A stretch of 63,874 bases of DNA, the filler included, from Octopus bimaculoides (taxonomy: Eukaryota): the NCBI RefSeq assembly GCF_001194135.2. It is 5 parts of 5 records of this genome, joined end to end, with 100 filler letters (N's around TTAATTAATTAA, not from the genome) between each part and the next. Parts side by side here need not be neighbours in the genome. Positions count along the whole stretch, not along the records: positions 38,861 to 52,046 come from NC_068994.1; 4 more parts are not named here. One strand, written 5' to 3'. The position numbers and the translations under genes were made by a program. The notes beneath the pieces are model-generated. The model did no database searches, was not told the origin of the DNA, and worked only from the letters and a program-made list of their open reading frames with translations. Of this stretch, positions 3,028-52,046 are shown piece by piece. Within the stretch, counting starts at the first letter, position 1, and each line of letters starts with the position of its first letter.

Positions 3028-3429
3028 TGTATGTATATTATAGTCATTAGATAGGGTTGGTGGAGGGTAGTTCTTTTGAAAGAAACTGCATAAAAATACC
3101 AGAATGTGTTCCTTCGGTTCCTTGGTTCATGTGCCATCACGTAGTTGTGTCACCTGCAAGAAATAGCAACCGAATCTTCCTTTACATACCAGATTCACAG
3201 TTTCCGCTGAGACAAAAAAACAGACTAAGTTAGACCACGTAAACTAATGTAGTTAGTGGCTCTATACAAATTTTATCTGAAAATAGATTAGGTCATGGAG
3301 AGAATGTCTTTGAGCAGAATGTCTAATATATCAGGGGCTTATTCGGGGTTAATTAACAACAACCAGAAATTCACCCTGAACGCCTTCAGATCGGTGGGCT
3401 TGGAGTGTGCACGAGCACATGTAATACAT

Positions 3430-3468
<39 letters not shown>

Positions 3469-5135
3469 NNNNNNNNNNNNNNNNNNNNNNNNNNNNNNNN
3501 NNNNNNNNNNNNNNNNNNNNNNNNNNNNNNNNNNNNNNNNNNNNNNNNNNNNNNNNNNNNNNNNNNNNNNNNNNNNNNNNNNNNNNNNNNNNNNNNNNNN
3601 NNNNNNNNNNNNNNNNNNNNNNNNNNNNNNNNNNNNNNNNNNNNNNNNNNNNNNNNNNNNNNNNNNNNNNNNNNNNNNNNNNNNNNNNNNNNNNNNNNNN
3701 NNNNNNNNNNNNNNNNNNNNNNNNNNNNNNNNNNNNNNNNNNNNNNNNNNNNNNNNNNNNNNNNNNNNNNNNNNNNNNNNNNNNNNNNNNNNNNNNNNNN
3801 NNNNNNNNNNNNNNNNNNNNNNNNNNNNNNNNNNNNNNNNNNNNNNNNNNNNNNNNNNNNNNNNNNNNNNNNNNNNNNNNNNNNNNNNNNNNNNNNNNNN
3901 NNNNNNNNNNNNNNNNNNNNNNNNNNNNNNNNNNNNNNNNNNNNNNNNNNNNNNNNNNNNNNNNNNNNNNNNNNNNNNNNNNNNNNNNNNNNNNNNNNNN
4001 NNNNNNNNNNNNNNNNNNNNNNNNNNNNNNNNNNNNNNNNNTATATATATATATATATATATGCATATATACATACATATATATTATCCAATGCCAACAC
4101 TTGATTGTTCTCTTAAGCATCAACACAACGAATCCGAATGTTCAGTCTTCTTAGTGACTTATACGTTTATGCACAGATTGGGGAATGATGGGCACCTCTT
4201 GCAGCGGGTGTTCAGAAAGCATAACACACACGGTGATTCATGTTTTCGTTTCGTCATCTAATTTTTCATTGAGTCTTTTGCATTTCTCGGCTACGGCTAT
4301 CCATAGTATGCAACACATAATAGAGATGCTAAAATTCAAGCGATGCCTGTGTCAGAATCTTTCTAAAGTGAATGAAAGGACTTTCAATGGGCCTGTCCCG
4401 CTCTCTAAAGAACCTATGTATATGTACAAAAAGAACTAATCGACATCATTAGATGCAAACGAGGTCATGGATGTTACATCATAGTTTTTCTTTCAGAGAA
4501 ATGTCTAAACAAGGACTTAGGGGTCTCCTAAGGTCAGTTGTTGCATGGCCCTTTGAAAGGATTGACTTTTCATCCTGCAAAGCATCTAAAGGAAAAAAAC
4601 TAACCTCCTGACCAAAAAAGCTGAGGAAGGTTGCCAATTTAGTAAGTGACGGCCCGACTATGCGACAGGCTGTACTAGGTTACATGTTGCTAGTTAGTAA
4701 GAGTACATTGGCATAATTTCCGTAGACGCGCGCACTCGTGTGTGTAGGTGTATGTGTGTGTGTATGTGTGTGTGTATGTGTGTATGGCTAAGTTTCCAAT
4801 TAACAGTTTCCAATTAGAATTTTTCTCTCAAAACGCGTTGGTAGAATTGAACATTCGAGACTTTGTATATTTGTATACTACTGCACTTTGGTATACAAAA
4901 AGATGGCAAGTTGTCAGTTTCCCAAATTCCCAGTAATTTCTTTTTCCATTCATATAGCGCCGAGGTCCCTGTACTTTTTTCCTCTTCTACGGAATAGATA
5001 AAATAAAGTACCAATCAAGTTCAAGGGCTGATGTAATCAACTTGCCCATACCTTTAAAAATTGCTGGCCTTGAGCCACAATTTGAAATTAATTGTTGTTA
5101 TTATCATTATAATTATTGTTGTTGTTGTTGTTAGG

Positions 5136-5342
5136 ACGGTGAGCTTGGCAGAATCGTTAGCTCGCCAGGCGAAATGCATACCGGCATTTTGCCCGTCGCT
5201 ACGTTCTGAGTTCAATTTCAGCCGAGGTCAACATTTGCGTTTCATCCTTACGGGATCGATAAAATAAGTACCAGCTGAACTCTGGGATCGATATAATCGA
5301 CTCAACCCAACCTCTCCCAAGCTGCCCTTGTGGCAAAAATTT
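5136..5342 (+). mobile_element. SINE family B
   Basis: Same head and central domain; a partial copy at about 4955-5050. Confidence 0.8.
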
Positions 5343-5491
5343 GAATGATAATAATAATAATAATAACTATTATTATTATTGTTATCATCATCATCATTAT
5401 TATTATTATTATTACTATTATTATTATTACACTTTATGTATTGAATACGTTTTCTTCGATTATAAGCACTCGCATTCACAAGTCTTTATAA

Positions 5492-5531
<40 letters not shown>

Positions 5532-5548
5532 NNNNNNNNNNNNNNNNN

Positions 5549-5590
<42 letters not shown>

Positions 5591-5592
<2 letters not shown>

Positions 5593-5727
5593 GACGGGCT
5601 TTTTTTAGTTTCTGTCTACTTTGGTCGGACCGAGGGTATAGTAGAAGACACTTGCCTAAGATGCCACGCAGTGGGATTGAACCAGAACCATATGGTTGGT
5701 CAGCACGTTACACTACCACGCAGCCAT
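5591..5727 (-). mobile_element. SINE family A 5' half
   Basis: Reverse complement of the family A head/body. Confidence 0.75.
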
Positions 5728-6403
5728 ATATATATATGCATGTATGTATGTATGTATGTATGAATGTATGTATGTATGTATGTACATGCGTTTGTGTGTG
5801 TGTGAGAGTGTTTGTAGATATGGCTATGCATTTACATAAATCTATACATACCTTAATATATATAAGTTCTCATACACATACATATAAGCAGAGTAAAAGA
5901 GAAAAATAAATAAAACGAAAACGAAAACTGATACCTTATTTAAAAATGAAGGTATAGTGATATATGCATTCACTTTCACATATATACACACACACACATA
6001 TATATATACTAAATTAAATATATATCATATACATTTTTTGTCATGTATGTATTGGCTTCGTGTGTATTCGACTTAATCATGTATTTTCCGAGTACTCGAT
6101 TGTATACGTATTTAGTTGTATAGTTTGAGTCATGTTTTTCTGTTAGCTTTATATATTGTTTGTATATACGCATGTATGCATGTATGTATGTGTGTGTTTA
6201 GTCGTGTGTGCTCTGTGTATATAGTTTGTATATTTTCTTGAAAGATTCTCCTCTTCATTGTTTTTATTCACAAGTTGGCATCAAAAGACAAACCCTGAAA
6301 CGCAACCACGTCAGTTCTGATACTTGTCTGGCATTTATTGATATTTCCTTCCAACTTTGAACTGCTCACTTCTACATCAAAACATACATTCTTTGTTTGC
6401 AGC

Positions 6404-6483
<80 letters not shown>

Positions 6484-6539
6484 TAATAATAATAATAGTA
6501 ATAATAATAGTAATAATAGTAATAATAATAATAATAATA

Positions 6540-6613
<74 letters not shown>

Positions 6614-10645: not shown

Positions 10646-12654
10646 CTCCTGTGCCTGTATATATAGGACGACGACGACTGCTTTGAGTCAATTCTTCAAA
10701 GCTAATGTCGTTCTTGCTCTCGTTCGGTTAGATCGCTTGTAAATGGCACAAAGGAATGGACACTTTCTTTAAAGCTCGAAGAACGATTAAAGGATTATTG
10801 CACTGAACTTCGACGCATATGCTGAAGGAAGTCTTTTTTTTTTTGTGGGGTGGTGGAGAAACACATCCATTATAAAAACAAATTTGTGAGTCTTTATTCC
10901 ACTCATGCCACTGAACATTAAGCACACTTTCCAAGGCGCTGCTTTGGAGTAAAATCTGTGTCAGTATTATCAATTATCTTTTACAAATGTTGGTCAGTTA
11001 CTGATGAGTCTCAAACTCTCTTGTCCCGAAACCATCACCAAAGATTTTCGATACTAAGTATGAATCTTTGGCGTGGTAATGCCGGATGGAACGAGCTGTG
11101 AGGAGAAATGAGGTCTGTCTTGACAGGGTCATCAACTGATGATGATGATGACGAAGAGTATGNNNNNNNNNNNNNNNNNNNNNNNNNNNNNNNNNNNNNN
11201 NNNNNNNNNNNNNNNNNNNNNNNNNNNNNNNNNNNNNNNNNNNNNNNNNNNNNNNNNNNNNNNNNNNNNNNNNNNNNNNNNNNNNNNNNNNNNNNNNNNN
11301 NNNNNNNNNNNNNNNNNNNNNNNNNNNNNNNNNNNNNNNNNNNNNNNNNNNNNNNNNNNNNNNNNNNNNNNNNNNNNNNNNNNNNNNNNNNNNNNNNNNN
11401 NNNNNNNNNNNNNNNNNNNNNNNNNNNNNNNNNNNNNNNNNNNNNNNNNNNNNNNNNNNNNNNNNNNNNNNNNNNNNNNNNNNNNNNNNNNNNNNNNNNN
11501 NNNNNNNNNNNNNNNNNNNNNNNNNNNNNNNNNNNNNNNNNNNNNNNNNNNNNNNNNNNNNNNNNNNNNNNNNNNNNNNNNNNNNNNNNNNNNNNNNNNN
11601 NNNNNNNNNNNNNNNNNNNNNNNNNNNNNNNNNNNNNNNNNNNNNNNNNNNNNNNNNNNNNNNNNNNNNNNNNNNNNNNNNNNNNNNNNNNNNNNNNNNN
11701 NNNNNNNNNNNNNNNNNNNNNNNNNNNNNNNNNNNNNNNNNNNNNNNNNNNNNNNNNNNNNNNNNNNNNNNNNNNNNNNNNNNNNNNNNNNNNNNNNNNN
11801 NNNNNNNNNNNNNNNNNNNNNNNNNNNNNNNNNNNNNNNNNNNNNNNNNNNNNNNNNNNNNNNNNNNNNNNNNNNNNNNNNNNNNNNNNNNNNNNNNNNN
11901 NNNNNNNNNNNTATATATATATATATACATATGCATATATACACACAATCATATACGTATATATATATATATATATATATACACATTTATTTAGACAAGC
12001 ATACACACGTATATACACATATTTGCACAAGTATATATACATTCGCACACACACTCACACATATATGTGTACTCGCCATACACAAAAGAATTCATATGTG
12101 CGTACCAGTCAGATAATTACGTATGTATATATTATACATACATAATATAATAATGTATTAATATTACATGGGTTTCGTTGCATATTAATATAAAATTTTT
12201 AACAACGTGTGCAAATATATGTAGCAAGCATTTCTTTGTCGATTGCCTCATTGAATTCTCTGTCCTTCTGTTCGTTGGCAATAATTATAGTTTTAATAAT
12301 ATATATTTTTTTTAATATCTAAACATATGTTACCTGTTCGTTATGACCTAACAGGATTCATTAAATAGAAGAACGTAGCTGGGAATAAAGGTGAGGGTTG
12401 AATGTGAGAATATATGTAAATTAGACACAAAGGTTGGGATTAAATGTACGAGCAAATGCGAAAAAGGGTTAAAGGTGATGTTGGTATGTGAGCAATTATG
12501 TAAACTAGGGGGCAAAGGTCAAAGTTGAATGGGAGAAAATAATCAAAATTATATATTAACATATAATACAAATATATAAACTATAAATTTATGAATTTAT
12601 TTATTGAGATATTTTATGTTTTTAAATTTCAATCGTGGAAAAGTATTGCAAGTA

Positions 12655-19894: not shown

Positions 19895-20265
19895 TGTATA
19901 ACTAAACACATAAACACACGCCAAAACATATGAGTAAATGCTTAACTAAACACATTGGCTAAATAACTAAACATGTAGCTAAACACATGACCAATCGTAA
20001 ACGAAATACGTAACTAAATATGTAACATCTCGAATAATAAACACGTGACTTAACAGACAATTAAATATAACTAAACATTAAACAGACATTTAAACATATA
20101 ACTAAACATGTGACAAACTTGTGCAATTTACAATTAGGTGGAAATCTAAACACATCACTAAACACAAAACTGAACAACATTTCTAAACATATAAAAATAT
20201 ATACTTAGCTAAGAAACTATCATATAGACTTATCTAAACACTTGTAAACATATTAACACATAATC
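19895..20265. repeat. Degenerate (ACTAAACACAT)-like minisatellite
   Basis: Recurrent taactaaaca/ctaaacac units. Confidence 0.6.
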
Positions 20266-21158
20266 AAAGCTAAGTCCATCCAGTGGTACAACCTATCATT
20301 GCTCACGTGCACCAAAGACAACAGGGGAGTAAAATCCGGGAAGTTAAATAATTCCTTATTCCTCGATGTAGCCTGAAATTTCAGAGATGAACGGAGATCC
20401 ACCAAGGGTGATGACACTTCAAGTATTGAGAGAAACCATATTGGAGACGATCCTACCTAAATTTTACCGGACAGCGCCCATTTATTAGTCGAGATATGAG
20501 TTGTTGAAACGATTGTAAACTACGTAAAAAAATTCATATGGCTGACTCCTTCGATATATATATANNNNNNNNNNTGTATGTATGTATGCATGTATGTATA
20601 TATATATGTATGTATGTGTGTATGCAGTGTTTTTAAACCGATCCAGTGATCTGTTACTCTGGAGTTTCCACAACGATCTGCTGCTTTTTCAAATTAGTCC
20701 AAATGGGTTCTGTGCGATGTGTCTGAAGAAGTGGTGGTCCGCTATGGAATCGTCAGAGTAAAAGTTCAGTGGACGGGTTTCAGTTATTGCATTCTACGCT
20801 TGTATTGAGTTCTTCTTTTCAGGATCTTTGCGCAATAACCCCGAGAGTTGGGGGTGTCAAGGTCTCAGATTACAAACAAGAGGAAGATATTTACACAGTA
20901 GTGTAGTCGAGGGGGGGGGGCAAGGAATTTGCGTGTGTGAATGCGTACACGAATGTGTGTGTGTGTGTGAGTGTGTGTGTGAATGCGTACACGAATGTGT
21001 GTGTGTGTGAGAGTGTGTGTGTGTGTGTGTGTGTAGCCGCTAGACTACTCTCTGTCACGATTCAGAGTTTCGCAAAACGTAGTTGTAACAGGAGTAACAT
21101 CTGAGGACTGCAATACTTAAATATATATACACATAAACGTTTGCATACATGCACAAAC

Positions 21159-29580: not shown

Positions 29581-29659
29581 GCAATATAAGAAAGTAATGT
29601 TAGATTGTGGTTCATCGTATAATGATTGACCACGATACTGTATTCACACATTGATGGAT

Positions 29660-29697
<38 letters not shown>

Positions 29698-29727
29698 TAC
29701 ATGCATACATACATATATATATATATA

Positions 29728-29756
<29 letters not shown>

Positions 29757-38860: not shown

Positions 38861-40274
38861 CATAGGTAAGGAACTTGAATGTGTCTTTCGTAAAGTGTGG
38901 TTCTACATCATTCACATCTAACACTTGGATTGACAGATCTTTATCAGTTTTCAGAGCAGGTAATCCTTTATCTTCACACGACACAGTAAAGTGATAATGT
39001 TCCTGTGTCTCTCTGTCTACTGCTTTCTTTAGAACTATTTTATATTCCTTTGATCCCATTGACTGTAGTTTGAATGTGTCGTCTTTGATATGACAGTTCA
39101 CCTGTCCATTGTGTCCAACATCATTGTCAGTGACCATCACATAAGCAATGAAACTACCAACTTTGATATCTTCCAGAATGGTGGCGGTGTTGTGATTCTG
39201 TGTAGAAATAAAGTTCACATCAATATTTGGGGGTTTGTTGTGTTCATTGATGACATTTACATGGACAGCAGCTATTGAACTCAGTGGTGGATTACCTCCA
39301 TCCCTGGCTTCTATATAAAGTGTATACATAATCTTCTCTTCATCAATATCAATTTCATCAATTAGAGAGATATCTCCAGTTGTTTTATTCAAGCCAAAGT
39401 ATGTTTTGTCAATATCAGAAGTCATTGGACTAAAATAATAAGAAATCATCCCATTTTTGCCACTATCCTTATCATTTGCAGAAGGAGTTAATATTGGTTT
39501 GAATATTTGATAAGTATTCTGAATAGAAATATTGTAGATGTCATTAGAGAAAAGAGGTAAATTATCATTCTCATCTTCTACAATTATTGTTATCTCTAAG
39601 ACACATTGTTTGGGTGGAGATCCCCCATCTGTAGCTGATACCTGAATATGATAGATATCTTTTTGCTCTCTATCTAATTTTTCATTCAAAACAATTTCTA
39701 ATCTGGATATTCCATCCACTCTTTTAGAAACAGACAGCACAAACTTCACAGAATTATTTCTCAATTTATAATTAATCAGTCTGTTTTGATATCCAACATC
39801 TTTATCAACAGCATTAGGTATGGCCTTCTTCATACCTTTACCATCTCCTTCCCTAAAATGTAGTGTGATTTCTTCCTCAGGAAACTCAGGCTGGTGGTCA
39901 TTGGTGTCTTCTATTACAACTTTAATCTTTAATATCTTCGTAAATGTTTTATGTTTGTGTATAGCAATTTTCACAGTTTTGTAACATTCAGTATTATATC
40001 GACACAAAACTTCAGCATCCAAAGTTTGAGCTGTGTACAATTTTCCTTCTTTTGTTACATTAAATAGTTGAGTTCCTTTCTGTTTAAGTTGATTAAATGT
40101 GAAGAGACTGGCATCATCAGTTAAAAGAGTTTTGGTGACAAGAGTTTCAGTAGCAATGTCGCCTATGAAATAGTAAGGAACATTTTCCTCTTTTACATGA
40201 AAGGTAATGTCTTTGCACAGACTACAATGCATACAAGAGAGAAGTATGCAAATTGCTACAAACATATTTGCCAT
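38861..40274 (-). CDS. Pcdh: Protocadherin ectodomain exon (signal peptide, EC1-EC4, start of EC5), truncated at assembly linker
   Basis: Uninterrupted 471-codon ORF. Hydrophobic Cys-rich signal peptide MANMFVAICILLSCMHCSLC. Cadherin motifs EDTNDHQPEF, LDRE, ATDGG, EDENDNLPLF, ARDGG, VDRE, CEDKG, LDVNDVEPHF. EC1 Cys pair LDAEVLCRYNTEC as in protocadherins. Intronless ectodomain. Symbol is family-level only. Confidence 0.96.
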
Positions 40275-40322
40275 TTGGATGAAGAAGGACTTCTATAGCA
40301 AAAAAAAAAAGGTAAACCACAC

Positions 40323-40348
40323 CTGAAATGAAAATATAAAATCTAATT
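40323..40348 (-). promoter_or_regulatory. Splice acceptor of a 5' UTR intron, 48 nt upstream of the Pcdh ATG
   Basis: Minus strand reads ttagattttatattttcatttcag|gtgtgg; exon starts at 40322. Confidence 0.6.
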
Positions 40349-40719
40349 AAAAATATATTTTCACAATTTTATTACAATTCCTCATGAAAAAGTTAAGAAA
40401 CATTAAACTTCCACTTCAAAAGATTAACCACACAAAGCAATAGAATTTCAAAAAATATTCAATAAAAATCATGTTGTTCATTCTATTCTAAAGTAACACC
40501 TACAACCAACAGTAATCATTAATACACGGAGTGTTCAGTTCACTCTACAAGTCACAGTTCCATTCATAAAAAGTGAAATAAAATAAGATTTCCTTACACA
40601 ACATTGTTCATGTACATGACAAAAGCAAAGTATGTGATGTATATTCTTCATAATTACTTATTCTGTTATTTTACTTGCAGAGGCAACTGGCAATAAATGA
40701 TGTGATTTGAGGAAGAAGT

Positions 40720-41095
40720 AAATGCTATTTCTATCAGGTTTAGCTGCTTCTCAAATTTGTGGTTTTGGATTCAGTTCCATGGCATGGTACCTTAGATAAG
40801 TGTCTGCTACTACAACCCCAGGCTGACCAAAGCCTTCTGAGTGGCTTTAGTACATGGAAACTGAAAGAAGCCTGTCTTATATATGTGTGTGTTTTATGTG
40901 TATTCATGTCTAGATATTACACGGTGGTTCTAAACAAGGGTCAGCATTATATAAACTGAGTTACTCATTTCCACTCTTCCATGAAGCATGACTGGTCAAT
41001 GGGAAATGTTACTTTGCCAAGAAACAGGTGAGGGTTGGCAACAAATAGAGCATCCAGCTACAGAAAATCTGCCACAACAAATTCCAGCTGACCAA
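40720..41095 (+). mobile_element. Diverged SINE family A head plus an RTE-tail-like fragment, in the putative Pcdh 5' UTR intron
   Basis: ggattcagttccatggcatggtaccttagataagtgtc...ggaaactgaaagaagcc; gggttggcaac...catccagctacagaaaatctgcc. Confidence 0.6.
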
Positions 41096-41624
41096 AACTA
41101 AAAATACCATCAATCAACTAAAATGCAAAATACACATATTTAAATAACACTAATTATAGATAAGTTCTTTAAAGCTAATCACCTAAACAATGTAATTAAG
41201 AGATGGATTCCTACAAGAATGTTAACCTTCTAATAAGCCAGTGTATGTAGTTCAAAGCATAATCATATAATGTGATTTCTTAACAAATAAACAATCAGTC
41301 CTATATAACATGTTTGAAATATAGGGAATATCTACACAAAAATATCTAATAAAACAACTCACCAATTTTGTTACATAACAGTGTTATATTCTGAGGCTGA
41401 GAAAGTCTAGTTTCAAATTTCAATTTGTTTTTGTTTTTCTGATCAGTTTGAAGAAGATGAACCTGTAGGGTTAGAAAATGATGAATGGTATTTAATAAGG
41501 TTTATATAAACCAGAGCAGAGAAAAGGAATTCTGATTCAGAAATACAATAATACATGAATTATGGACCAGGTGTTATTTAGTGTCCCACATTACCAAAGG
41601 CAACAAATTGATAGAATTATTACA

Positions 41625-41760
41625 GCTTCAGACAGAATGCTCTGTGGCATTTGTTTTGACTCTTTGCACCCAAGTTCAAATCCTGCTGAGGCCAAGTATA
41701 CCTTTCATCTTTACAGGTTTCATAAATAAGGTACCAATCTATTGCAGGGAACTGGACAAG
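41625..41760. mobile_element. SINE family B, diverged
   Basis: caagttcaaatcctgctgaggcc...cctttcatct...ataaataaggtacc; orientation not resolved with confidence. Confidence 0.55.
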
Positions 41761-43383
41761 CTTTTTTAAGGGTCGGATGAGATGAGTTGTGGTATTTACT
41801 CCATTTCTTTGCATTTTAAGTTTAAATTCTGCCTAGGTACCAAAAGTCACCTGCAATAACCTGCAGGCCTAGTATGACAAATAAAGCAAACCGTGAAGGC
41901 AATGCTAGCACCAAATAGATGCTGTTGGGTGAAATCAAGAGAAGGGTTTCTCTGATGGAGAAACTTATACACTGGTAACAATTATCAAATATCTATAATT
42001 TATCTTCTTTGGGTAAAGAAACTATCTGACAAAACAGTAAATATTTCTCACACACATACCCTCTTTAATCATGCTTTGTTGACTAATTACTATAATACAT
42101 TGTAATAATTATATATATAAAAATAAGAAATGTCTACGATACCTATTTGCAGACAAAATGCCGCTATTCATTTTGCCCAGTGTGCTAACAATTCTGCCAA
42201 CTCACAGCCTCGATAGTGATATTAAAATTTTAAAATAAAATAATCTTAGTATTTTATTTTGTCTTAGTTTTTGAGAGTGAACACCAAAACAACAGATGGA
42301 ATTTTTAAAGACCATCATTAAAATAGTTGTGATGAACAAAATGGAGTATGGTCCCAATGAAGTGACATCTGATGGTATGGTCATTTCAATTTACTTGCAT
42401 CGCTAACAACATTAGAACAACCTACCAAATCCCTTTTTTTTTCTTCAATAAAGACAATAGAAATAATCACCTATTGATGGATACCCCTAATTATGTAACT
42501 TCAGACATTTGACCTCCACTATTGAGTAAAATAAAAGCAAATATATACTAAAATATATAAAAATCTTAATAATGGAACAACATCTCTGCTAATTAATAGT
42601 TTCAATTTATAAAGAAATAACCAAAACTAAATTCTTTAATTTCAAATCAAATTTCACCACAGGTGACTCTACCTAATTACAAGTATGAAGAGACAATACT
42701 AGAAACATACGGATGTTGATTCAGTCAAATATAAGTAAAATACTAACCAGCAAAAGTAAACTGTTGTCATAAATTAAAAAAAACTAAAACACTTATTCAA
42801 ATCAAGGTTAAATTATTTTGATTAATAAGTATTACCAATTGAAACATGGATAAAATATCAGATATTGTTATATTTAAGAAAATTAAATCTTCATAGAAGA
42901 CAGCAGTTTAGAAGACTAAATTACAAAGCAGTAATACACTTCCTTTATGTACTGTTTCCTTCCATGCCAAGGCTAAACTCTTTAACAAATAAGTGTCTCA
43001 CGAGGATACAACAGAACAAATGTATGTATTGAAAATAACTGAAGTATTTGGATCTCAGTTAATAAAAGTATATTACAAACTGAGGACTGGGAAATAAAAG
43101 CTAAAAAGAAAAGGTCATTTGTAAAGAGATAAAAATATGGATATATTAGGATAAGTAATAAGGATTTGGTGGCCAGTTGAAATGTATCAACATTAAGAAC
43201 TATAGAGAAGCACACTAATATTTGGAATAAAAAAAAGTAAAAGATAAAGGAAATTCTAAATATAATTAGAAGATTTTCCTTCATGAGAATCTGAATTAGA
43301 AATTTGTTAGTTTTGTAATAAAGAAAATATATAAATTTCGTTGTGTAAATTATACAAGAATATAATATTAATGACAGACTTAC

Positions 43384-43600
43384 ATTTATTGTGTAAAATC
43401 CTTTGTTGTATAAATTGTGACTTGGTCCCAATGTTCTGTTGTTAATGGTTGTCTGTGTCACTGCTGCTATGGTGTGACAATGGCTTCATGTTGATGGAAT
43501 AGTGTTGGTGGTGAGTCAGTGGGGAACCAGCAGTTCCTCTCAGTCTTCCTTTGTGGATGTGTGATGTTTAGTGTGTGTAAGTATATGAATGTGTGTGTGT
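43384..43600 (-). other. Candidate non-coding first exon / promoter of the minus-strand Pcdh
   Basis: Donor AAAT|GTAAGT at 43383-43378. More GC-balanced island in AT-rich surroundings. AP-1 site TGAGTCA at 43512-43518. 5' boundary is a guess. Confidence 0.35.
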
Positions 43601-43745
43601 GTGAGAGATGGGTGATGCTTATTCCAGTTTCACTCAGACTATTTCCCCTCACACAGAAGAAGAAAGAATACAGAATATCAGCCCCGTTAACAGTCAGCCA
43701 TGTTAAGTCTATACAACACCAATATGTCTGATGTAGAGAGAGAGT

Positions 43746-43748
<3 letters not shown>

Positions 43749-43830
<82 letters not shown>
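43749..43830. repeat. (AT)n microsatellite; representative of dozens of (AT)n/(AC)n/(TATG)n tracts, which flank many N gaps
   Basis: Direct reading. Confidence 0.95.
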
Positions 43831-43834
<4 letters not shown>

Positions 43835-44258
43835 TAAGTGTTTCATACAGATCTTATATTAGCAAAACATTATTGTTGTTAGTAAATACATTTACTAACT
43901 TATGATGTTAAACAGACAATTCTAGTTAGAATATGTCTGACTTAAATATAACACAAAATCTATAATGGAAAATACTGATAAATATGTTTATAAATGAGGA
44001 TATTTTGTAATAATTTATATTTTATGACTTAATTTCTAAAAAATATCAGTTGTCATTATAAACACAGAAGGAATGTTTAAAAAAATTGTCTAAATGCTGT
44101 AAGACAAATGTCTTCTTAAGAAAGTCATTTCTTGTTTCTTAAATGCGAATATATAATTAATTTTTTATCATATTATTTTTTGATTGTCTATTTAAACATA
44201 AACATTCAAGACACTACTTATCAATGCCAAGCTTCCTTATTGCTATTTTAATATATAC

Positions 44259-44491
44259 ATATCAGCTGAATAAAGTAACAACATCGTCTGGTTTTCACAT
44301 TTTTTATAATGGTATTTTAACATTAAAAAATATTTTGTAACGCTCATAAAGTTAAATTAGCGCTTTCATACACTATATATGAAAGTGCTAATTTAACTTC
44401 ATGAGCGTTACAAAATATTTTTTTTAATATCAAAATACCATAATAAAAAACATGAAAACCAGACCATGTTTTAACTATATTCAGCTGATAT
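44259..44491. repeat. 233-bp near-perfect palindrome (MITE-like foldback) in the putative 3' UTR of the minus tail gene
   Basis: Arms 44259-44370 and 44378-44491, 7-nt loop, 11 substitutions plus a 2-nt bulge (about 90% identity). Confidence 0.95.
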
Positions 44492-44520
44492 ATTATTCTA
44501 TACACATTCACACAAATTCG

Positions 44521-44567
<47 letters not shown>

Positions 44568-44644
44568 TGAGATGAAACATTGTCCAATCCAGCAGAAAAT
44601 GATTCAGGTGATATTAAAATAAAACATCCATTACTCATTCTTAA

Positions 44645-44650
44645 TTTATT
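44645..44650 (-). terminator. Candidate proximal polyadenylation signal AATAAA (minus tail gene)
   Basis: About 76 nt downstream of the stop; a second AATAAA at 43835-43830. The hexamer is common in AT-rich DNA. Confidence 0.3.
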
Positions 44651-44725
44651 CCGAAGACTTAAAGATCCACTACAAATTTATATAATGTGAAAGGTTAGGA
44701 GTTTGTGAGTAATAATTGTGACTGA

Positions 44726-44841
44726 TCAGTTGTTTATAACATCAGGTGTAGCAGGGAGTTGTCTTTCTGGAGGCTTCACGTATCTGTCCTGGGGCAGTTT
44801 CTCAGTATTGGCTGCGGGGTCCTGTTGCATACCATAGACAG
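44726..44841 (-). CDS. Terminal coding exon (AVYGMQQDPAANTEKLPQDRYVKPPERQLPATPDVINN*)
   Basis: Acceptor tgtatatgtttcag at 44842-44855. In frame with the preceding exon; TGA at 44728-44726. Clear paralog on the plus strand at 45786-45904. Confidence 0.75.
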
Positions 44842-44927
44842 CTGAAACATATACAATGGTAATACATAGAGTCAGTTTTGTACATTATATTTATCTTTGT
44901 TATTCTCTTAGTTTATACTACCCTTAC

Positions 44928-45081
44928 CTGACATTGCTGGTATTTCTTCATACTGTCTACTTGACCGCTCACTCCAGCACTGTCCACTGCTCTTACAACT
45001 GGTTAATGTGTCAGTGGGATAGTTAGAAGATGGTCTGTTGTCTCCATAAGATGTCACCTCAATGGGTTGACTGTATTTCTG
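44928..45081 (-). CDS. Internal coding exon of a probable protocadherin cytoplasmic tail (QKYSQPIEVTSYGDNRPSSNYPTDTLTSCKSSGQCWSERSSRQYEEIPAMS)
   Basis: Bounded by acceptor ttgtattttacag (NAGNAG) and donor G|GTAAG. 154 nt, open, phase 1. Splices in frame over an 86-nt GT-AG intron to the next exon. Assignment to Pcdh is an inference from context. Confidence 0.7.
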
Positions 45082-45785
45082 CTGTAAAATACAACAGCAA
45101 CAAGATATAAATAATATAATTGATGATACTTTCTCTGGAGTTGTATGCATGCAGCCATCTTTGGTATAAAACAACTGCCTACTTTTTTACCAATTATCAA
45201 TCAGTTTGGCAAAATAACTGTAAAATAATTTCTTAGGCAGGCACAAGGTCCTTTTTATGGAAAGAATACAGTCAATGGAACTGCCCTCCATACATAACTG
45301 GTATAAAAGGCAAACTCCAGCAGGATTTTGACTCAGCATACAACTAGACATAAATACTGTCAAACAATTAATCCATGGCTTGACCATTTCTGATACTACT
45401 CACCTTTTTGGGTGAACAAAAAATAATGAACATCTTTGAAAACCACAGCCGTTTGTTAAACTCAGGTCCTAGTTCTAGTAACACTAAGTGAATGAAAGAT
45501 GACTAAAGCATTGGTTAGCAATGAAGACTATTCTAAATAATATTCTCANNNNNNNNNNNNNNNNNNNNNNNNNNNNNNNNNNNNNNNNNNNNNNNNNNNN
45601 NNNNNNNNNNNNNNNNNNNNNNNNNNNNNNNNNNNNNNNNNNNNNNNNACAGTAATTCATTACTAATTATTGTACTAATTATTGTTGTTGAATGACATCT
45701 AATTAGTTCTGTGTGTATGTCCCTAGAGTATTTCTGATGATGGTGATTGTTTCAAACATTGCTACATTAAAACAATCTTTTGCAG

Positions 45786-45904
45786 GGATCTATGGTAGCC
45801 AACAGGATACACCAGTGAACCCTGAAAGACAACAGTACCAAGACAGATATGTGAAACCTCCAGAGAGACAGTTACCTTCAACACCAGATGTCATTACTAA
45901 CTGA
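45786..45904 (+). CDS. Paralogous terminal coding exon (GIYGSQQDTPVNPERQQYQDRYVKPPERQLPSTPDVITN*)
   Basis: Acceptor aatcttttgcag ending at 45785, same phase (1) as the minus copy. Shares YGxQQD, QDRYVKPPERQLPxTPDVIxN and the stop position, with synonymous changes inside the conserved block. Confidence 0.75.
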
Positions 45905-46293
45905 CCACTGGTCACTTACTAAATATTGACCCCTCAGAACAAGATTTCAAATATAATACTCATCCTACACACTCACACACTCAAAGTAATATAAATATCA
46001 TAACTTCTAACTTTACCTTACAGTTACAATATTATATACCAACATATGACACAATATATAGATGCCAACAATGAAGTCAGCAACATTTCAATATTTATAA
46101 ACACACAGAATTTTACATATTGTTTTATATCAGCCAATATTTTCTCTGATATTCTCAGTTATCTGCTCTTTATGAAATTTCCCAAATATCTCTGGCATTA
46201 AATTAGAATAGATTTAAAATATATATCTCTATTTTTTACAACAGTGTTTTTAAAATCTAACACTTAGGAAATTATATATAAAAATGATACCAA

Positions 46294-46299
46294 AATAAA
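46294..46299 (+). terminator. Candidate polyadenylation signal AATAAA (plus tail gene)
   Basis: About 390 nt downstream of the TGA at 45904. Confidence 0.3.
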
Positions 46300-47879
46300 C
46301 ATGCCTGAAAATTAGAATATTCCTTCTGTATTTGTTCATACATCCTCCATTATAGGTTGGGTGTATATTTAGGTCAGACACATCTTAACTAGAATTATTC
46401 TATATTAACATCATTTGCTAGTAATATATTTACCAATATCAGTGATATTTTGTTAATATAAAATCTGTATGAAACACTGAATATNNNNNNNNNNNNNNNN
46501 NNNNNNNNNNNNNNNNNNNNNNNNNNNNNNNNNNNNNNNNNNNNNNNNNNNNNNNNNNNNNNNNNNNNNNNNNNNNNNNNNNNNNNNNNNNNNNNNNNNN
46601 NNNNNNNNNNNNNNNNNNNNNNNNNNNNNNNNNNNNNNNNNNNNNNNNNNNNNNNNNNNNNNNNNNNNNNNNNNNNNNNNNNNNNNNNNNNNNNNNNNNN
46701 NNNNNNNNNNNNNNNNNNNNNNNNNNNNNNNNNNNNNNNNNNNNNNNNNNNNNNNNNNNNNNNNNNNNNNNNNNNNNNNNNNNNNNNNNNNNNNNNNNNN
46801 NNNNNNNNNNNNNNNNNNNNNNNNNNNNNNNNNNNNNNNNNNNNNNNNNNNNNNNNNNNNNNNNNNNNNNNNNNNNNNNNNNNNNNNNNNNNNNNNNNNN
46901 NNNNNNNNNNNNNNNNNNNNNNNNNNNNNNNNNNNNNNNNNNNNNNNNNNNNNNNNNNNNNNNNNNNNNNNNNNNNNNNNNNNNNNNNNNNNNNNNNNNN
47001 NNNNNAATTATGGTTATTTTTCAAGTGAAATATATTTAAATCCAGTTAGTTTGTTGTGTCTTATTTGCAGACATCTTCATATATTATCAGTATTGATAAT
47101 GTATAATATATAACCACAAGATGTTCTTTATTGTGTGTATTTTAAAGAAATTTGAGTGTTTCTTGTTAAGGATCTTTTGAGAGAGTCAAGTATCTTTATT
47201 ATGTTTATATGTAAGAATGTGTTGTATTAATATAAAATATTAAAGTGAAACTGGGAGAATAGTTGACAAGATGGTGGTTTAGTGTCAATATATATATAAT
47301 GAATATTGTGTTGTGGTATTGTTTAACTCTTTCTAAATTTATTATTCTGTCAGATTTTATTGGTTTTAATCTGTTTTGTTGCATTCATACTGAAACACTG
47401 TCGTATTTGGTCTTGTTTAATGAATATCTTTTAATTAAATGTGGTGTTGATGGCGGAGGTTTTCTGTCATTAGATATTTCTGTAAAATTTTGTTCACTAA
47501 AAGAACTGTATTTACATTGAATTACACTATTGTATCTATAATACAATAATTGTATTTTCATAATGTATTTGTCATTTGTGTATGAAAGAGAACTTCATCA
47601 TCATCATTGGATGTCCATTATCCATGCTGAAAATGGATTGGACAGTTTGATGGGAAGCAGTGCCTCTAAGGATGACATTGATCTCCAGTGTCCGTTTTGG
47701 TATGCAACTGGATGACCTTCCTAACCTCCAACCACTTTATAGCATGGGCTGGGTGTGCTTTACATGCCACCCACACTGCTGGAGTCACAGTGCAGTTTGC
47801 AGCTTGAAAGTGAAGGAGAGAGAGAAGGATAAAGAAGAGAAAATGATGTGTAGGAGCTGTAAAACATAGTGGTGATAAG

Positions 47880-50800
47880 GGATCCAGGTTACCCCACAAG
47901 GCACAAGCTAGGTAGAAGTGTGTGTGTAGGTAATTTGTAAGATTGTATGGGAAGGTGAATGAAGGGTAGGGCAGGCTGCCAAAATGGGTAGGGCTGGAGG
48001 AAGGATGAGACAAGAGTTGTGCGCTCAGGATGATTGAGGGATGCAGAAGAGTGGGGAGAAGAGGGGGTAGCAAGAGTAGTAATGATGATACAGTTGCTGA
48101 TGGTGGGGAGGACGAGGAGGGTGGAGGAAGAGATAAGTGTAGCATGTGAGAGGAGGGAATTTCTGAAACAGACTGAGTCTCCAAAATATAGCACTTCCAG
48201 GACTCAGTCCCAGTGAGGAAGGTGAGTCCTTTTGAGAACCTTATATCATGAGAGATCCCGGTCCTTTGTCATCTCATCCAGGAGGTTCAAAGAGCTGAGG
48301 TCAGCTTCCACCACTTCATCCCATTTCTTCCTGAGGGTTCCACACCCCTTTAAGCAAACAGCAGTTCTCATCCACTTGCATCCTGTGGCCACACCATCTC
48401 AATCTTCTCTTCTTTCTGGAACACAACAGCTGATACCTCCTATATCTAGTTTTCCATCCAGAATTTTTAATTAGAATTTCCAAAACTGATCCATTACAAC
48501 CATAAGAATTCTTGTAAATAAATGGAAAATATTGATCAGTATTAATTATAAATTTTTTGTCTTTTCCTAATTGTTATAAATGTCTATTTTATACAAATCT
48601 AGTTGTCCTTTATCCTGAGTTAATGTGACATCTTCATTGAAAAAAACTTTCTGCCATTGTCTTTCTGATGATTTCTCCATGTTTTGTTTTTGAACTAGAA
48701 AAACCTTGTTTAAATATCATTTTAGTTTTTATAGAGAAAGATTTATTTATTGTAGAGAGGAACGAACCACTTTCTTGTTGACAGTTCCTTAAGGGTGAAT
48801 ATATTGTCTTCTCTCAAAAGTGTCACCTTTTGATCTTTTGCTGGGAGCTTCTATCTGGTTGCTTGATTTTCTTATATAACAGCCAAATTCACCCTCTTCT
48901 ACAACCTCCATCTACATTAAATGATCATTACTTCTTCACACAGCTGTCCTCATCCAGATGCATCACAAGTGCATACCAGAACAGTCTTCTTTCTTGCACA
49001 CTACATTTAATTCTTCATATGCTCAGTTTTTCTTGCAACATTTTTGTATTATGCCATTCATGCACCCTTACATCCAATAGAACCTGCTGGTTCATTTCTT
49101 TCCACTTTTCTCAAGTCCTTTACACTTGAGGCCCCTGTCTCTCTACCATGCAGTATCACAGTTCTAACAAAACTATCAAACAATCTCCACTTCCCTCTGA
49201 GGGAAAGATTTTTATTGCCAGCAGTAGTAATACCAATTTTCCAACCTGTACTTACTCTGGCTACCCTACTTTCAGTGCAACCATCTTCCCCGATAATTAT
49301 GTCTCCTCTATAACAAAAGCTATTGTCTACTTCCTGTGAACCACCTGAGAATTGAAGAGAATCAATTTCTTGTGTTCTCATAGTACATTCTGTTTCTGTG
49401 CTCGTGTCACATAGTGTGTTTTGTTAGTCTGCCTGTGATTCCACTGCACCACTTGTGCATAGCTGTAACTTACACTGGATGCAGCAATTGGCATTTATAC
49501 GTATTCTTTTTCTGCATTTTCATTTTGATCAAGGCCATTTACAATATCTGGATCCTGTCTTCTTTCGGACTTACTAAAAACCTTAGTCTTGACTAAGTTT
49601 ACCTTGATTTTTAGGTTTAGCTTCCATACCTGGAATTTCTTCTCTAATTCCTCCATAGATTCAAGTATGAGAAATGGATTATCAACAAATGCAAATCTCC
49701 ATGGATATCTAATCTTAAATTTCTTTGTGATGGCTTCATGGACTGTGATGAATAGGAGAACACTGAGATTGAACCTTGATGGATCCCTACTGTTCCTCTA
49801 CTGTTCCTCTAAATTCATTACTGAAATCCTTGTAGACTCTTATTTTACTGCACAGACTTCACAGGTCATTCATCAACACTTAGTAACCACCAAATTAACG
49901 AGCATGCTATCCTGTCAAATACCTTCTCTAAATCAGCAATTGTCAAGAAAAACAGTAGCAAAGTATTTCTCGTTACAGTTGCATCTGTTTTGGGTCAATT
50001 ATGTTATGACACACTTCAACCTTCATAGTTTTTTTTTTATTCCTCTGTAATTTTCTCTTTCTAAGGCCTTGGTAATATTTTGGTGAGGCATGTGTAGGGT
50101 TATGTTGAATTTATACCTTTTGTACACAATGTTTAGCATCTCAATAGAGAAAGGGAGCAATTTGAGAATGAGTTATTTAAAAAAAATTCTTTACACCCCT
50201 TCTGTGGACAATTTTATCAAATTTTTGACACTTTAGAGAGATCAAGTTGTTTAAAATTTGACACTTTAGAGACATCAGGTCATGTCATTTTCATCAGCTC
50301 TATTCATAAGATCTGATGTCTCTAAAGTGGAAATAAGATTATTTCCTTCAATTTAGTGGTTTGTGAAAACATGTAGGTAAAAGTGTATGTGTGTCTCCTA
50401 GACATTTTTTTTTTATTTTGATTCCCGGTAATATTGTAAGCATTAACCAAAGTTAAATATCACAAGGGAGCTTCAGGATTTTAGAAATGATTCGTTGGGG
50501 ACCACTGCTCTAAGGCATCTCCTTTGTTTTTGTGTCAGTTCATTGTTATATCGCTATGTCAGTCATTGGGTATGATGCCTTCCTGTATAACCTGATTTCC
50601 TATCCAGGTAGTAATCATTTCGCTTACCTTCCCAGATATCTTGAACATCTCTACAACTTGCTTTCTCTTCATGCCCATAATTTCTTTGTCAACCACATTA
50701 CTTGTCAACTTGAATTGCTGGTCCTCTGTAGGCTCCCCCTGTTTATCCCATGCATTCTCCACATTCGACAACCTCTCATAATAGCACTCCCTTGCCTCTT

Positions 50801-51350
50801 GTCTTCCATGGCTAATGTGCCTTCATCATTCCAAATATACTTCTCACCAATGGTATCTGAACTCTCTCTAACTGTCTTACAATCCTGATCCTTATGTTGC
50901 AAATTTCTTCTTTTCTGCCCTACCCTTATCTGAGTATACCTGTTTGCCTAGCTACCCTTCATGCTGTTTGATAATGCTCCCTACAGTCACCTTCCTTCTG
51001 GGTTTTCCAAGCCTGTCCCTTTGTCTTTACCATTCTATCATCTATATCATTCCACCATCAGTTTGACTGGGAGTTTGTCAGATCCATAGCCCTTGCAGAT
51101 TATTTTGCTGGAATTCTCAGTAGCCATCTATGTTGCAGGTGTTTCAATCTTTCTCCCTACAGTCATGGATCTTTTAGCTTCCATGCCTAGCTTCTCCATA
51201 TCGTCTTCTGTTTCTGTGTCTAACTTCACTCTGACTCTGAACTCTCTAACCACTCATCCACATTGTGTTGTGCATTCTTTATCAGGAAAGGTTTGGATTG
51301 TTTACAATGGTCCTTCTGTCTTATTTCCTGGTAAGAATGAAATCTAACTT
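47880..51350 (-). mobile_element. Decayed RTE-clade LINE with nested insertions, antisense to and upstream of the plus Pcdh
   Basis: EGIIPND, KGDAL, DLEKVFDR, GIHQGS, degenerate YADD (FAFVDN), FCYRGDII..GCTES.VARV, SLRGKWRLFDSFVRTVILHGRET, VQERRL, KKWDEVVEADL..LNL.DEMTKDRD; many frameshifts. Confidence 0.8.
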
Positions 51351-51780
51351 GAGTGATTAATAGATTGTACATGATGAGGTGGTTGGCTGTGTTTTCTTCA
51401 CTCCAATATCTATCCAAATCAGTTAAAAAGACAGTTAAATATTTTATATTTCATATAAAACATTCTTACAAATAACAAGTATCTGCTCCATGGAATTCTG
51501 TGACATTGTGCTTGAAGTATTGCATTTTAAAGTTTAGTTAATGAAGCAAAGATGGAAATTATCATTGTATAATTTACAGGAAGGTGATTATGAACTTAAT
51601 ACTGCTTCGTTACAGATTTTATAAATATAATATATTGGGTATTATTGTGATTAATGAAGGTAAAGCAGGAAAGAATGGAAACATTCAATACAATAAAAAG
51701 ATATTTATTTTGCTGTGGTTAATAGAATAAATATTATAAATCTGTTATTTGTTTCTGTAAAGTAAATGGCAGTTGTGTAC

Positions 51781-51794
51781 CTTTATATTTTCAG
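51781..51794 (+). promoter_or_regulatory. Splice acceptor of a 5' UTR intron, 28 nt upstream of the second Pcdh ATG
   Basis: ctttatattttcag|atcaat; same architecture as the minus-strand paralog. Confidence 0.6.
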
Positions 51795-51822
51795 ATCAAT
51801 TGACTGGTATTTAACTCAACTA

Positions 51823-52046
51823 ATGAAGATGGTCTTAATAGCGATATGGATATTACAGTGTCTGCTTCACTGTTCTGTCTCTAAAGACATTGTTTACCAT
51901 GTGAAAGAAGAAAACAGTCCTATTATCAACATAGGAGACATTACTGCTGATTCAAAGTTAAAGGACCCTGCATTATTATCATTCAGTCAGTTACAACAGA
52001 AGGGAACACAGCTATTTAATGTGACCAACACTGGAAAGATATACAC
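51823..52046 (+). CDS. Pcdh: Second protocadherin, N-terminus (signal peptide + partial EC1), truncated at assembly linker
   Basis: MKMVLIAIWILQCLLHCSVSKDIVYHVKEENSPIINIGDI...QLQQKGTQLFNVTNTGKIYT aligns with the minus-strand copy (KDITFHVKEEN...IGDI...QLKQKGTQLFNVTKEGKLYT). The ATG at 51823 follows a splice acceptor, so the ORF-track start at 51766 is probably intronic. Confidence 0.9.

What the first reader, a model, noticed from the sequence alone, without database searches (positions are those of the whole stretch)
38861..52046. Mirror-image protocadherin module: tail exons and ectodomain exons radiate in opposite directions from a central axis
Seen: reading outward from about 45.6 kb, each arm has the same order, a terminal tail exon with stop and 3' UTR, then kilobases of spacer, then a 5'-UTR acceptor, then a Pcdh ectodomain exon (left arm on minus, right arm on plus). 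Each tail lies UPSTREAM of the same-strand ectodomain, and no same-strand ectodomain exon exists upstream of either tail within this block. Established: coleoid Pcdhs are expanded in tandem arrays; vertebrate clustered Pcdhs splice many variable exons to shared constant exons. Inference, three options: (a) two antiparallel interleaved Pcdh arrays, in which each transcript must read antisense through the other strand's tail exon and promoter, a possible mutual-exclusion or promoter-choice mechanism; (b) an inverted duplication or inversion breakpoint in a head-to-tail array that orphaned both tails, or made them shared or trans-spliced constant exons; (c) two contigs joined in the wrong orientation at the exactly 100-N gap 45549-45648. 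Option (c) is a serious possibility.
Basis: partly seen in the sequence, partly recalled or inferred. Interest (0 to 1): 0.78.

Follow-up and report, generated by a model that had tools for sequence, protein, structure and literature searches.

The report
Inverted scaffold in octopus protocadherin array
The mirror-image arrangement of protocadherin gene pieces is really in this Octopus bimaculoides reference sequence, but it is almost certainly an assembly artefact: a 31-kb scaffold was inserted backwards during Hi-C scaffolding of an ordinary head-to-tail gene array.

Summary
Two homologous protocadherin (Pcdh) 3' ends diverge from the 100-N gap at 45549-45648, and each is followed 4.4-5.9 kb downstream by the start of the next Pcdh gene.

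The window is O. bimaculoides assembly v2, CM046614.1 (record coordinate = window + 2,498,260). In gap-free Argonauta, O. sinensis and O. vulgaris loci, every gene of this subfamily has one large exon plus its own two small tail exons. All genes lie head-to-tail on one strand. The tails are therefore private exons, not constant exons.

The sequence left of the gap is a 30,955-bp block (genes B, E, F, G on the minus strand). It is bounded by the only two exactly-100-N gaps among 15 gaps in about 78 kb.

- At the far gap, two tail-less gene heads (G and H) converge.
- At the finding's gap, two head-less tails diverge.

O. vulgaris has F'→G'→D' on one strand. G' is 93.5% identical to G and ends in the window's plus-strand tail. 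Block and right arm are collinear with it; 2,257 nt are unassembled.

Inverting the block makes G whole. Low interest, except as an error report for a reference assembly.

The parts
38861..40274 (-). 5' part of the large (ectodomain) exon of Pcdh gene B (signal peptide, EC1 to EC4). ATG at 40274-40272. Cut at the piece's edge, which abuts a 1192-N gap in the source record.
   Evidence: ORF. (100% to A0A0L8FH51; Pfam Cadherin_2 and Cadherin). (XP_014789892.2; L005 gap at 11415-12606).
40275..40322 (-). Putative 5' UTR of gene B, downstream of an acceptor-like tttcatttcag|. Presence of a 5'-UTR intron is inferred, not shown.
   Evidence: A similar pyrimidine-tract-cag motif lies 10-60 nt upstream of the ATG of genes B, D, E, F, G and of the O. 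vulgaris and O. sinensis orthologues.
43348..43969 (-). Conserved downstream / 3'-UTR elements of the gene unit. 43832-43969 mirrors 46346-46483. 43348-43766 recurs downstream of every gene of the array in three species.
44726..44841 (-). Last coding exon 'a' (AVYGMQQDPAANTEKLPQDRYVKPPERQLPATPDVINN*). It belongs to the gene that precedes B in the array.
44928..45081 (-). Penultimate coding exon (QKYSQPIEV...EEIPAMS). NAGNAG acceptor; donor gtaagg.
   Evidence: It is 94-98% identical to the penultimate exons of all paralogues.
45082..45548 (-). 3' part of intron 1 of that gene. The block and contig end here.
45549..45648 (.). 100-N gap. A scaffold join of unknown size made when the shotgun scaffolds were ordered with Hi-C. 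The flanks are not true neighbours.
45649..45785 (+). 3' part of intron 2 of gene G. In O. sinensis and O. vulgaris the aligned sequence starts 30-32 nt after the penultimate exon.
45786..45904 (+). Last coding exon 'b' of gene G (GIYGSQQDTPVNPERQQYQDRYVKPPERQLPSTPDVITN*).
45905..46484 (+). 3' UTR / downstream region of gene G. 88% identical to the O. sinensis and O. vulgaris orthologous regions.
46485..47005 (.). 521-N sized gap. It hides the array-wide conserved downstream element. The flanks are collinear with the long-read assemblies.
51795..52046 (+). Putative 5' UTR after the acceptor (51794) and the start of the large exon of Pcdh gene D (ATG 51823). Cut at the piece's edge, which abuts a 1944-N gap.
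   Evidence: 91-93% identical to O. sinensis P0007 and the O. vulgaris D'.

Best explanation
The piece comes from a tandem, head-to-tail array of closely related protocadherin genes on Octopus bimaculoides chromosome record CM046614.1 (assembly v2).

Gene structure. Each gene has a large exon of about 800 codons (signal peptide, cadherin repeats, transmembrane helix, start of the cytoplasmic domain), then its own penultimate exon (about 51 codons) and its own last exon (about 39 codons). In such an array the tail of gene n always lies a few kb upstream of the head of gene n+1.

Cause of the mirror image. The 30,955 bp to the left of the 100-N gap (record 2,512,854-2,543,808; genes ..tail a, B, E, F and the 5' half of G) sit in the record in the wrong orientation. 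This block is bounded on both sides by 100-N joins introduced when the short-read shotgun scaffolds were ordered and oriented with Hi-C (HiRise plus Juicebox).

True layout, all on one strand: H.. | ..tail a → B → E → F → G 5' half | G tail b → D.

The plus-strand 'tail' of the finding is the last exon of gene G. About 2.3 kb of G is unassembled: the rest of the large exon, intron 1, the penultimate exon and about 30 nt of intron 2. That stretch is nearly identical among paralogues, and it is also missing, as sized gaps, from genes B, E, F and D.

Shown:
- the gene structure and the private tails;
- the two 100-N boundaries with complementary broken gene ends;
- collinearity of block plus right arm with one continuous O. 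vulgaris strand.

Inferred:
- that the 100-N gaps are Hi-C joins and the block is one shotgun scaffold;
- that tail a belongs to gene H.
For: 1. Gene structure and private tails.
- Argonauta L001 (gap-free) has three tandem genes. Each has a large ORF ending ...RTLQKSMK|gtaagt, plus its own penultimate and last exon.
- The same holds for O. bimaculoides B, E, F, D, for O. sinensis and for O. vulgaris.

2. Source of the window. It is GCA_001194135.2 CM046614.1, at 100% identity.

3. Second 100-N gap at record 2,512,754-2,512,853.
- Gene G (371 codons, open) runs into it from one side.
- Gene H (66 codons) runs into it from the other side, on the opposite strand.
- Of 15 gaps seen in about 78 kb, only these two are exactly 100 N, and they are the two points where orientation switches.

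4. O. vulgaris P0129 (879 aa).
- It is 93.5% identical to G over 371 aa. The best O. bimaculoides paralogue reaches only 61% or less.
- It ends with tail b, 38 of 39 residues identical.

5. Collinearity with gap-free O. vulgaris L007, which carries F'→G'→D'→D'' on one strand.
- Block positions L006 20960→29654 align to L007 904→11123 at 77-91% (most segments 87-91%).
- Window 45649→52046 aligns to L007 13381→16714.
- The unaligned stretch between them is 2,257 nt.
- In O. sinensis L002, the tail b→D region likewise follows directly, on the same strand, after the end of a large exon and a penultimate exon.

6. Both halves of G look functional.
- The 5' half has dN/dS of about 0.16 against O. 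vulgaris.
- Exon b shows 0-1 non-synonymous and 2 synonymous differences, and its splice site is intact.

7. Assembly method. The authors state that v2 is the published shotgun assembly scaffolded with HiRise and curated in Juicebox, with no gap closing (PMC9068888 Supplementary Note 1).

8. Accession numbers. In the v1-based annotation, B (XP_014789892) and D's tail (XP_014767718/9) are about 22,000 numbers apart, whereas neighbouring genes in v2 are numbered consecutively. This suggests different v1 scaffolds.

9. Literature. [quoted passage not shown]
Against: - No O. bimaculoides reads or independent O. bimaculoides assembly could be examined. A real inversion specific to this species or individual is therefore not formally excluded.
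- O. vulgaris and O. sinensis are sister species, so they count as one outgroup lineage.
- That HiRise joins are written as exactly 100 N is my own knowledge, not a tool result. I did not see the AGP file.
- After the flip, H (only 66 codons assembled) would face tail a. I could not test whether they are one gene, and further unplaced scaffolds may belong in that gap.
Confidence: 0.9

Rival explanations
1. A real 31-kb inversion specific to O. bimaculoides (or to the sequenced animal). Its breakpoints lie inside gene G and inside gene H (or the owner of tail a), leaving two truncated heads at one end and two orphan tails at the other.
For: The orientation is what the deposited record shows. 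The only outgroups are the sister pair O. vulgaris and O. sinensis. Tandem arrays with 98%-identical segments are prone to rearrangement.
Against: - Both 'breakpoints' coincide exactly with the only two 100-N joins, and neither junction is sequenced.
- What is missing at the junction is exactly the paralogue-conserved stretch that short reads also failed to assemble in B, E, F and D.
- Both halves of G keep open frames and intact splice sites, and show purifying selection.
Confidence: 0.05
2. The orientation is right and the 100-N gap (true size unknown) hides two head-to-head gene 5' halves with a divergent promoter region. The far gap would then hide two tail-to-tail 3' halves.
For: A 100-N gap conventionally means unknown length. 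About 0.14 Gb of the assembly is unplaced.
Against: - The region orthologous to the right arm follows directly after G' in O. vulgaris. G's 5' half is already present at the far end of the block, up to the very edge of the gap.
- This rival needs four extra hidden gene halves, including a second G-like head, where one flip explains everything.
Confidence: 0.03
3. Two antiparallel interleaved Pcdh arrays, whose transcripts read antisense through each other's tails and promoters; or tails used as shared or trans-spliced constant exons.
For: Only the mirror layout itself. The first search with the tail returned just two small stand-alone gene models.
Against: - Those small models are truncated annotations. 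The large Pcdh ORF lies directly upstream in Argonauta and in O. sinensis.
- Every gene has its own tail exons.
- Introns are about 1.6 kb or less.
- There are no opposite-strand Pcdh exons within the block or within 20 kb to the right of the gap.
- The literature states that cephalopods do not splice to shared final exons.
Confidence: 0.01

Closest known systems
Coleoid cephalopod tandem protocadherin arrays (Albertin et al. 2015; Albertin et al. 2022, PMC9068888; Styfhals et al. 2019, PMC6339937)
   Same: Multi-exonic, closely related Pcdh genes lie in same-orientation tandem sub-arrays on one chromosome. They arose by whole-gene duplication and are homogenised by gene conversion. The corrected locus is exactly this.
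   Different: Nothing biological differs. The apparent orientation switch is confined to one 31-kb block between two scaffold joins in assembly v2.
Vertebrate clustered protocadherins (alpha and gamma clusters: many variable first exons spliced to three shared constant exons)
   Same: A large first exon encodes the ectodomain, the transmembrane helix and the proximal cytoplasmic part. Small downstream exons encode the distal cytoplasmic tail. The tail is much more conserved than EC1-3.
   Different: Here each gene has its own two tail exons 0.3-1.6 kb downstream of its own large exon. No sharing is seen in any of four species. The tail has no Pfam match.
Local inversion errors of small scaffolds in Hi-C scaffolding (HiRise and similar tools; my own knowledge)
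   Same: A short block (31 kb) flanked by fixed-length join gaps, whose reversal restores gene integrity and synteny.
   Different: I could not inspect the Hi-C map or the AGP. The error is inferred from gene structure and cross-species collinearity.

Membership tests
Protocadherin (cadherin superfamily) | N-terminal signal peptide and Cadherin_2 (protocadherin-type EC1) domain, followed by multiple cadherin repeats | tested here: met
   B (P0003) has precomputed PF08266 and PF00028. The G orthologue P0129 has Cadherin (5 stretches, E=9e-66), Cadherin_2 and Cadherin_CELSR2_9th.
Protocadherin (cadherin superfamily) | Single transmembrane helix and cytoplasmic tail after the ectodomain | tested here: met
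   Seen by eye in the Argonauta large ORF and in P0129 (..TLLIIIVVAAVIVSIAIVVSITLCIV..). The cytoplasmic sequence that follows continues into the two tail exons. No transmembrane predictor was run.
Vertebrate-type clustered Pcdh locus with constant exons | Many variable exons spliced to one shared set of constant exons | tested here: not met
   Each of 3 Argonauta genes, at least 5 O. bimaculoides genes, 2 O. sinensis genes and 3 O. vulgaris genes has its own penultimate and last exon directly downstream. PMC9068888 states the same.
Scaffold-orientation artefact | The block is bounded on both sides by scaffold-join gaps, and neither junction is sequenced | tested here: met
   100-N gaps lie at record 2,512,754-2,512,853 and 2,543,809-2,543,908. 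All 13 other gaps seen have other sizes, 83-5518 N.
Scaffold-orientation artefact | Reversing the block restores gene integrity and collinearity with independent contiguous assemblies | tested here: met
   G 5' half plus tail b equals O. vulgaris G' (P0129). Block and right arm map to one strand of gap-free L007, with 2,257 nt missing. O. sinensis L002 agrees for the right arm.
Scaffold-orientation artefact | Reads or contact data from the same species contradict the assembled orientation | not testable with these tools
   No O. bimaculoides reads, Hi-C map, AGP or second assembly were available.

The most novel reading that the evidence does not exclude
The 31-kb inversion is real in O. bimaculoides. 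A recent rearrangement inside the Pcdh array would then have split gene G and created a divergent pair of orphan tails and a convergent pair of truncated heads. That would be a natural case of array remodelling, possibly with antisense transcription across the junctions.
Probability: 0.05. Interest if true: 0.35.

Novelty: not a real feature. Interest (0 to 1): 0.08.

Why it matters
As biology it does not matter: the locus is an ordinary same-strand protocadherin array of a kind already described.

It matters practically in two ways.

First, the O. bimaculoides chromosome-scale reference has a mis-oriented 31-kb block at CM046614.1:2,512,854-2,543,808. This breaks at least one protocadherin gene (G) into a 391-aa 'protocadherin-17' model and an unannotated tail, and it creates an orphan 112-aa gene model. 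Counts and orientation statistics of Pcdh genes, and any analysis of promoter choice or antisense transcription in this array, would be misled by it.

Second, several 'uncharacterized' small proteins (O. sinensis LOC115219122, O. bimaculoides LOC106867375, Argonauta Ahia01_000691400) are simply Pcdh tails.

Tried and rejected
- **Tail search.** A database search with the minus-strand tail returned only two small stand-alone proteins. For a while this suggested that the tails were an independent small gene or a rare constant region. I rejected this when the Argonauta locus showed an 800-codon Pcdh ORF running straight into the 'start' of the 128-aa model, with two more genes carrying their own copies. 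The word-index search simply missed the full-length proteins.
- **Upstream exon.** I looked for the upstream exon (SDRYGHSRSHYYPEDW...) in the piece on either strand. It is absent.
- **Failed look-ups.** P0001 and P0004 are not on record.
- **Third homology search.** I ran it with too strict an E-value cut-off, so it listed only 4 proteins and no orthologue. The O. vulgaris orthologue of G was found instead through cluster membership.
- **UniProt accession prefixes as a proxy for v1 scaffolds.** B, E and F are 'FH..', D's tail is 'I2..' and the left array is 'G7..'. This is only suggestive, so I gave it little weight.
- **Pfam.** The tail and two intergenic ORFs gave no hit.
- **Palindrome 44259-44491.** No other copy in the fetched loci.
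- **H and tail a.** I could not test whether they are one gene, because no orthologue with tail a was found in L002, L004 or L007.
Full report
**What is in the piece.**
The piece 38861-52046 has two runs of N: 45549-45648 (100 N) and 46485-47005 (521 N).

On the minus strand:
- A protocadherin large exon starts at ATG 40274 and stays open to the left edge. I call this gene B.
- Two small coding exons lie 4.4 kb upstream of it. The first is 45081-44928 (QKYSQPIEV...EEIPAMS; acceptor ttttacag|CAG, donor |gtaagg).
- After an 86-nt intron comes 44841-44726 (AVYGMQQDPAANTEKLPQDRYVKPPERQLPATPDVINN, TGA).

On the plus strand:
- A single homologous last exon lies at 45786-45904 (GIYGSQQDTPVNPERQQYQDRYVKPPERQLPSTPDVITN, TGA). 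It has the same splice phase.
- The start of another Pcdh large exon (gene D) follows 5.9 kb downstream, at ATG 51823.

The arms are homologous in mirror order: last exon 73%, a 3'-UTR element 81%, and the start of the large exon 74-77%, with E-values from 4e-14 to 7e-30. A pyrimidine-tract-cag acceptor motif precedes both start codons, and also those of five other genes of the array. The only correction is that the left 'tail' is two exons.

**Are these Pcdh tails, and are they shared?**
A search with the left tail returned only two small proteins: O. sinensis 'uncharacterized LOC115219122' (120 aa) and an Argonauta hians hypothetical protein (128 aa).

The Argonauta locus is gap-free and settles the matter.
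- The 128-aa model begins inside an 800-codon ORF that is an obvious protocadherin: cadherin repeats, a transmembrane helix, then ...SDRYSHSRSHYYPEDWKTATMNRTLQKSMK|gtaagt.
- The two flanking Pcdh genes each carry their own near-identical penultimate and last exons.
- All three genes are on one strand.

The same three-coding-exon structure with private tails is seen in O. bimaculoides genes B, E, F and D, in O. sinensis and in O. vulgaris. Albertin et al. [quoted passage not shown]

So in a normal array the tail of one gene lies upstream of the head of the next. What needs explaining is only why two such units face away from each other at the 100-N gap, with neither tail having a head.

**Where the piece comes from.**
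Gene B is 100% identical to O. bimaculoides A0A0L8FH51 / XP_014789892.2. The piece matches GCA_001194135.2 CM046614.1 at 100% identity, with record coordinate = window + 2,498,260.

Both edges of the piece abut sized gaps (1192 N and 1944 N) inside the large exons of B and D. [quoted passage not shown]

**The other end of the block.**
Walking left in the record, the minus-strand array continues B → E → F → G.
- Gene G has 371 open codons.
- It is cut in the EC4 region by a second gap of exactly 100 N (record 2,512,754-2,512,853).
- Immediately beyond that gap, a further gene H (66 codons assembled) lies on the opposite strand and also runs into the gap.
- Further left (L003) and to the right of the finding (L008), all Pcdh landmarks are on the plus strand.

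The 30,955-bp block therefore has two tail-less heads converging at one end and two head-less tails diverging at the other. I saw 15 gaps in about 78 kb. Only these two are exactly 100 N; the others measure 83-5518 N. One reversal of the block turns all four broken ends into head→tail junctions on one strand.

**Cross-species test.**
The 90%-identity cluster of G contains O. vulgaris CAI9733487.1 (P0129, 879 aa).
- It is 93.5% identical to G over all 371 codons. G's best O. bimaculoides paralogue is 61% or less.
- It ends ...EEIPAMSGIYGSQQDTPGNPERQQYQDRYVKPPERQLPSTPDVITN. This is the window's plus-strand exon b, with 38 of 39 residues identical.

Its locus L007 is gap-free and reads F' → G' → D' → D'' on one strand.
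- The O. bimaculoides block, from F's 3' part through the F-G spacer to the last base before the 100-N gap, aligns collinearly to L007 904→11123, most segments at 87-91%.
- The finding's right arm 45649→52046 aligns to L007 13381→16714.
- The 2,257 nt between them are the rest of G's large exon, intron 1, the penultimate exon and 32 nt of intron 2.

In O. sinensis the right arm is likewise collinear over 7 kb. There it is preceded on the same strand by the end of a large exon, a 1.6-kb intron and the penultimate exon, and the window's contig begins 30 nt after that exon.

The unassembled stretch is nearly identical among paralogues and between species. The EC4 segment shows 98-99% nucleotide identity to O. 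sinensis and O. vulgaris; against the O. bimaculoides paralogues it is 96-100% identical at the protein level. The corresponding stretch is also missing, as sized gaps, from B, E, F and D.

**Functional state of the two halves of G.**
- The 5' half has dN/dS of about 0.16 against O. vulgaris.
- Exon b has 0-1 non-synonymous and 2 synonymous differences, and an intact acceptor.

This is as expected for one intact gene. It is not expected for halves separated by an old inversion.

**The two gaps.**
- The flanks of the 521-N gap are continuous. They are collinear with 606 nt in O. sinensis and 635 nt in O. vulgaris. That interval holds a downstream element repeated after every gene of the array.
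- The flanks of the 100-N gap are not neighbours.

**Conclusion.**
The mirror image is best explained (about 0.9) by a shotgun scaffold placed backwards between two Hi-C joins.

Residual alternatives:
- a real species-specific inversion (about 0.05);
- a correctly oriented block with four hidden gene halves (about 0.03);

I could not test whether tail a belongs to H, and no O. bimaculoides reads were available.

That HiRise writes joins as 100 N is my own knowledge. It receives indirect support from the accession numbers: B and D's tail are about 22,000 numbers apart in the v1 annotation, whereas neighbouring genes in v2 are numbered consecutively.

Noticed in passing
window 38861-39227; L006 gaps at 5388-6579, 11262-12570, 20060-20959, 29655-29754; L008 8042-9985: Within this subfamily, EC1-3 are diversified: 47-60% amino-acid identity among paralogues and about 76% nucleotide identity. 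The stretch from EC4 to the tail is 96-100% identical among paralogues at the protein level, and 98-99% identical in nucleotides between octopus species. Every gap inside a gene starts in this conserved part. The pattern fits concerted evolution by gene conversion, and it explains why short reads could not assemble the array.
   Followed up: partly
window 45076-45084 (minus strand): The penultimate exon has a NAGNAG acceptor (ttttacag|CAG|AAA). NCBI isoform pairs differing by one Gln at exactly this point exist in O. bimaculoides (LOC106867375 X1/X2, 208 and 207 aa). The O. sinensis X2 model lacks the Gln, while the Argonauta model has it.
   Followed up: partly
L005 5125-5549 (= window about 44726-45150); L006 28532-31172; L001 10001-11260; O. 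sinensis LOC115219122: Several annotation artefacts. An orphan 112-aa gene is called on tail a. G is modelled as a 391-aa 'protocadherin-17' that reads across the 100-N gap into unrelated sequence. The 120-aa O. sinensis and 128-aa Argonauta 'uncharacterized/hypothetical' proteins are the 3' ends of Pcdh genes whose large ORF lies directly upstream. Fused models of 1091, 1102, 1701 and 1788 aa span neighbouring genes.
   Followed up: partly
window 44259-44491, flanked by 43749-43834 and 44521-44565: A 233-nt near-perfect palindrome (87% self-complementary) lies about 235 nt downstream of the stop codon of tail a. (AT)n tracts of 45-85 nt flank it, about 425 nt away on one side and 30 nt on the other. 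It accounts for most of the extra length of the left arm's 3' region compared with the right arm. No other copy was found in the fetched loci.
   Followed up: partly
window 43348-43766; L007 4000-4425, 14196-14653, 21043-21496; L002 3879-4306, 14591-14924, 15934-16204: An element of about 420 nt recurs 0.4-1 kb downstream of the last exon of every gene in the array, in O. bimaculoides, O. sinensis and O. vulgaris. It is always in the same orientation relative to the gene. It is part of the duplicated gene unit (3' UTR or downstream regulatory sequence) rather than a transposon. Its right-arm copy is hidden in the 521-N gap.
   Followed up: partly
window 48574-51725: A 3.1-kb stretch of the G-D spacer is shared with O. 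sinensis (81%). It is absent from both D-upstream spacers of O. vulgaris, and it has weak partial matches (67-79%) in another O. sinensis Pcdh region (L004). It is probably repeat-derived. The ORF at 49058-49381 (minus strand) has no Pfam hit.
   Followed up: partly
window about 44998-45000 (minus strand codon in TSCKSSG): The left penultimate exon has Cys where all other copies seen have Arg, or His in O. vulgaris G'. That covers O. bimaculoides B, F, D and P0005, O. sinensis, and Argonauta. It is a single CGN→TGY-type change, and the exon is otherwise intact.
   Followed up: no
L007 16491-20501 and 23286 onward: O. vulgaris carries two tandem D-like genes (N-termini 93% and 91% identical to D). 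O. bimaculoides shows one, with no further Pcdh landmark in the 10 kb after D's tail (L008).
   Followed up: no
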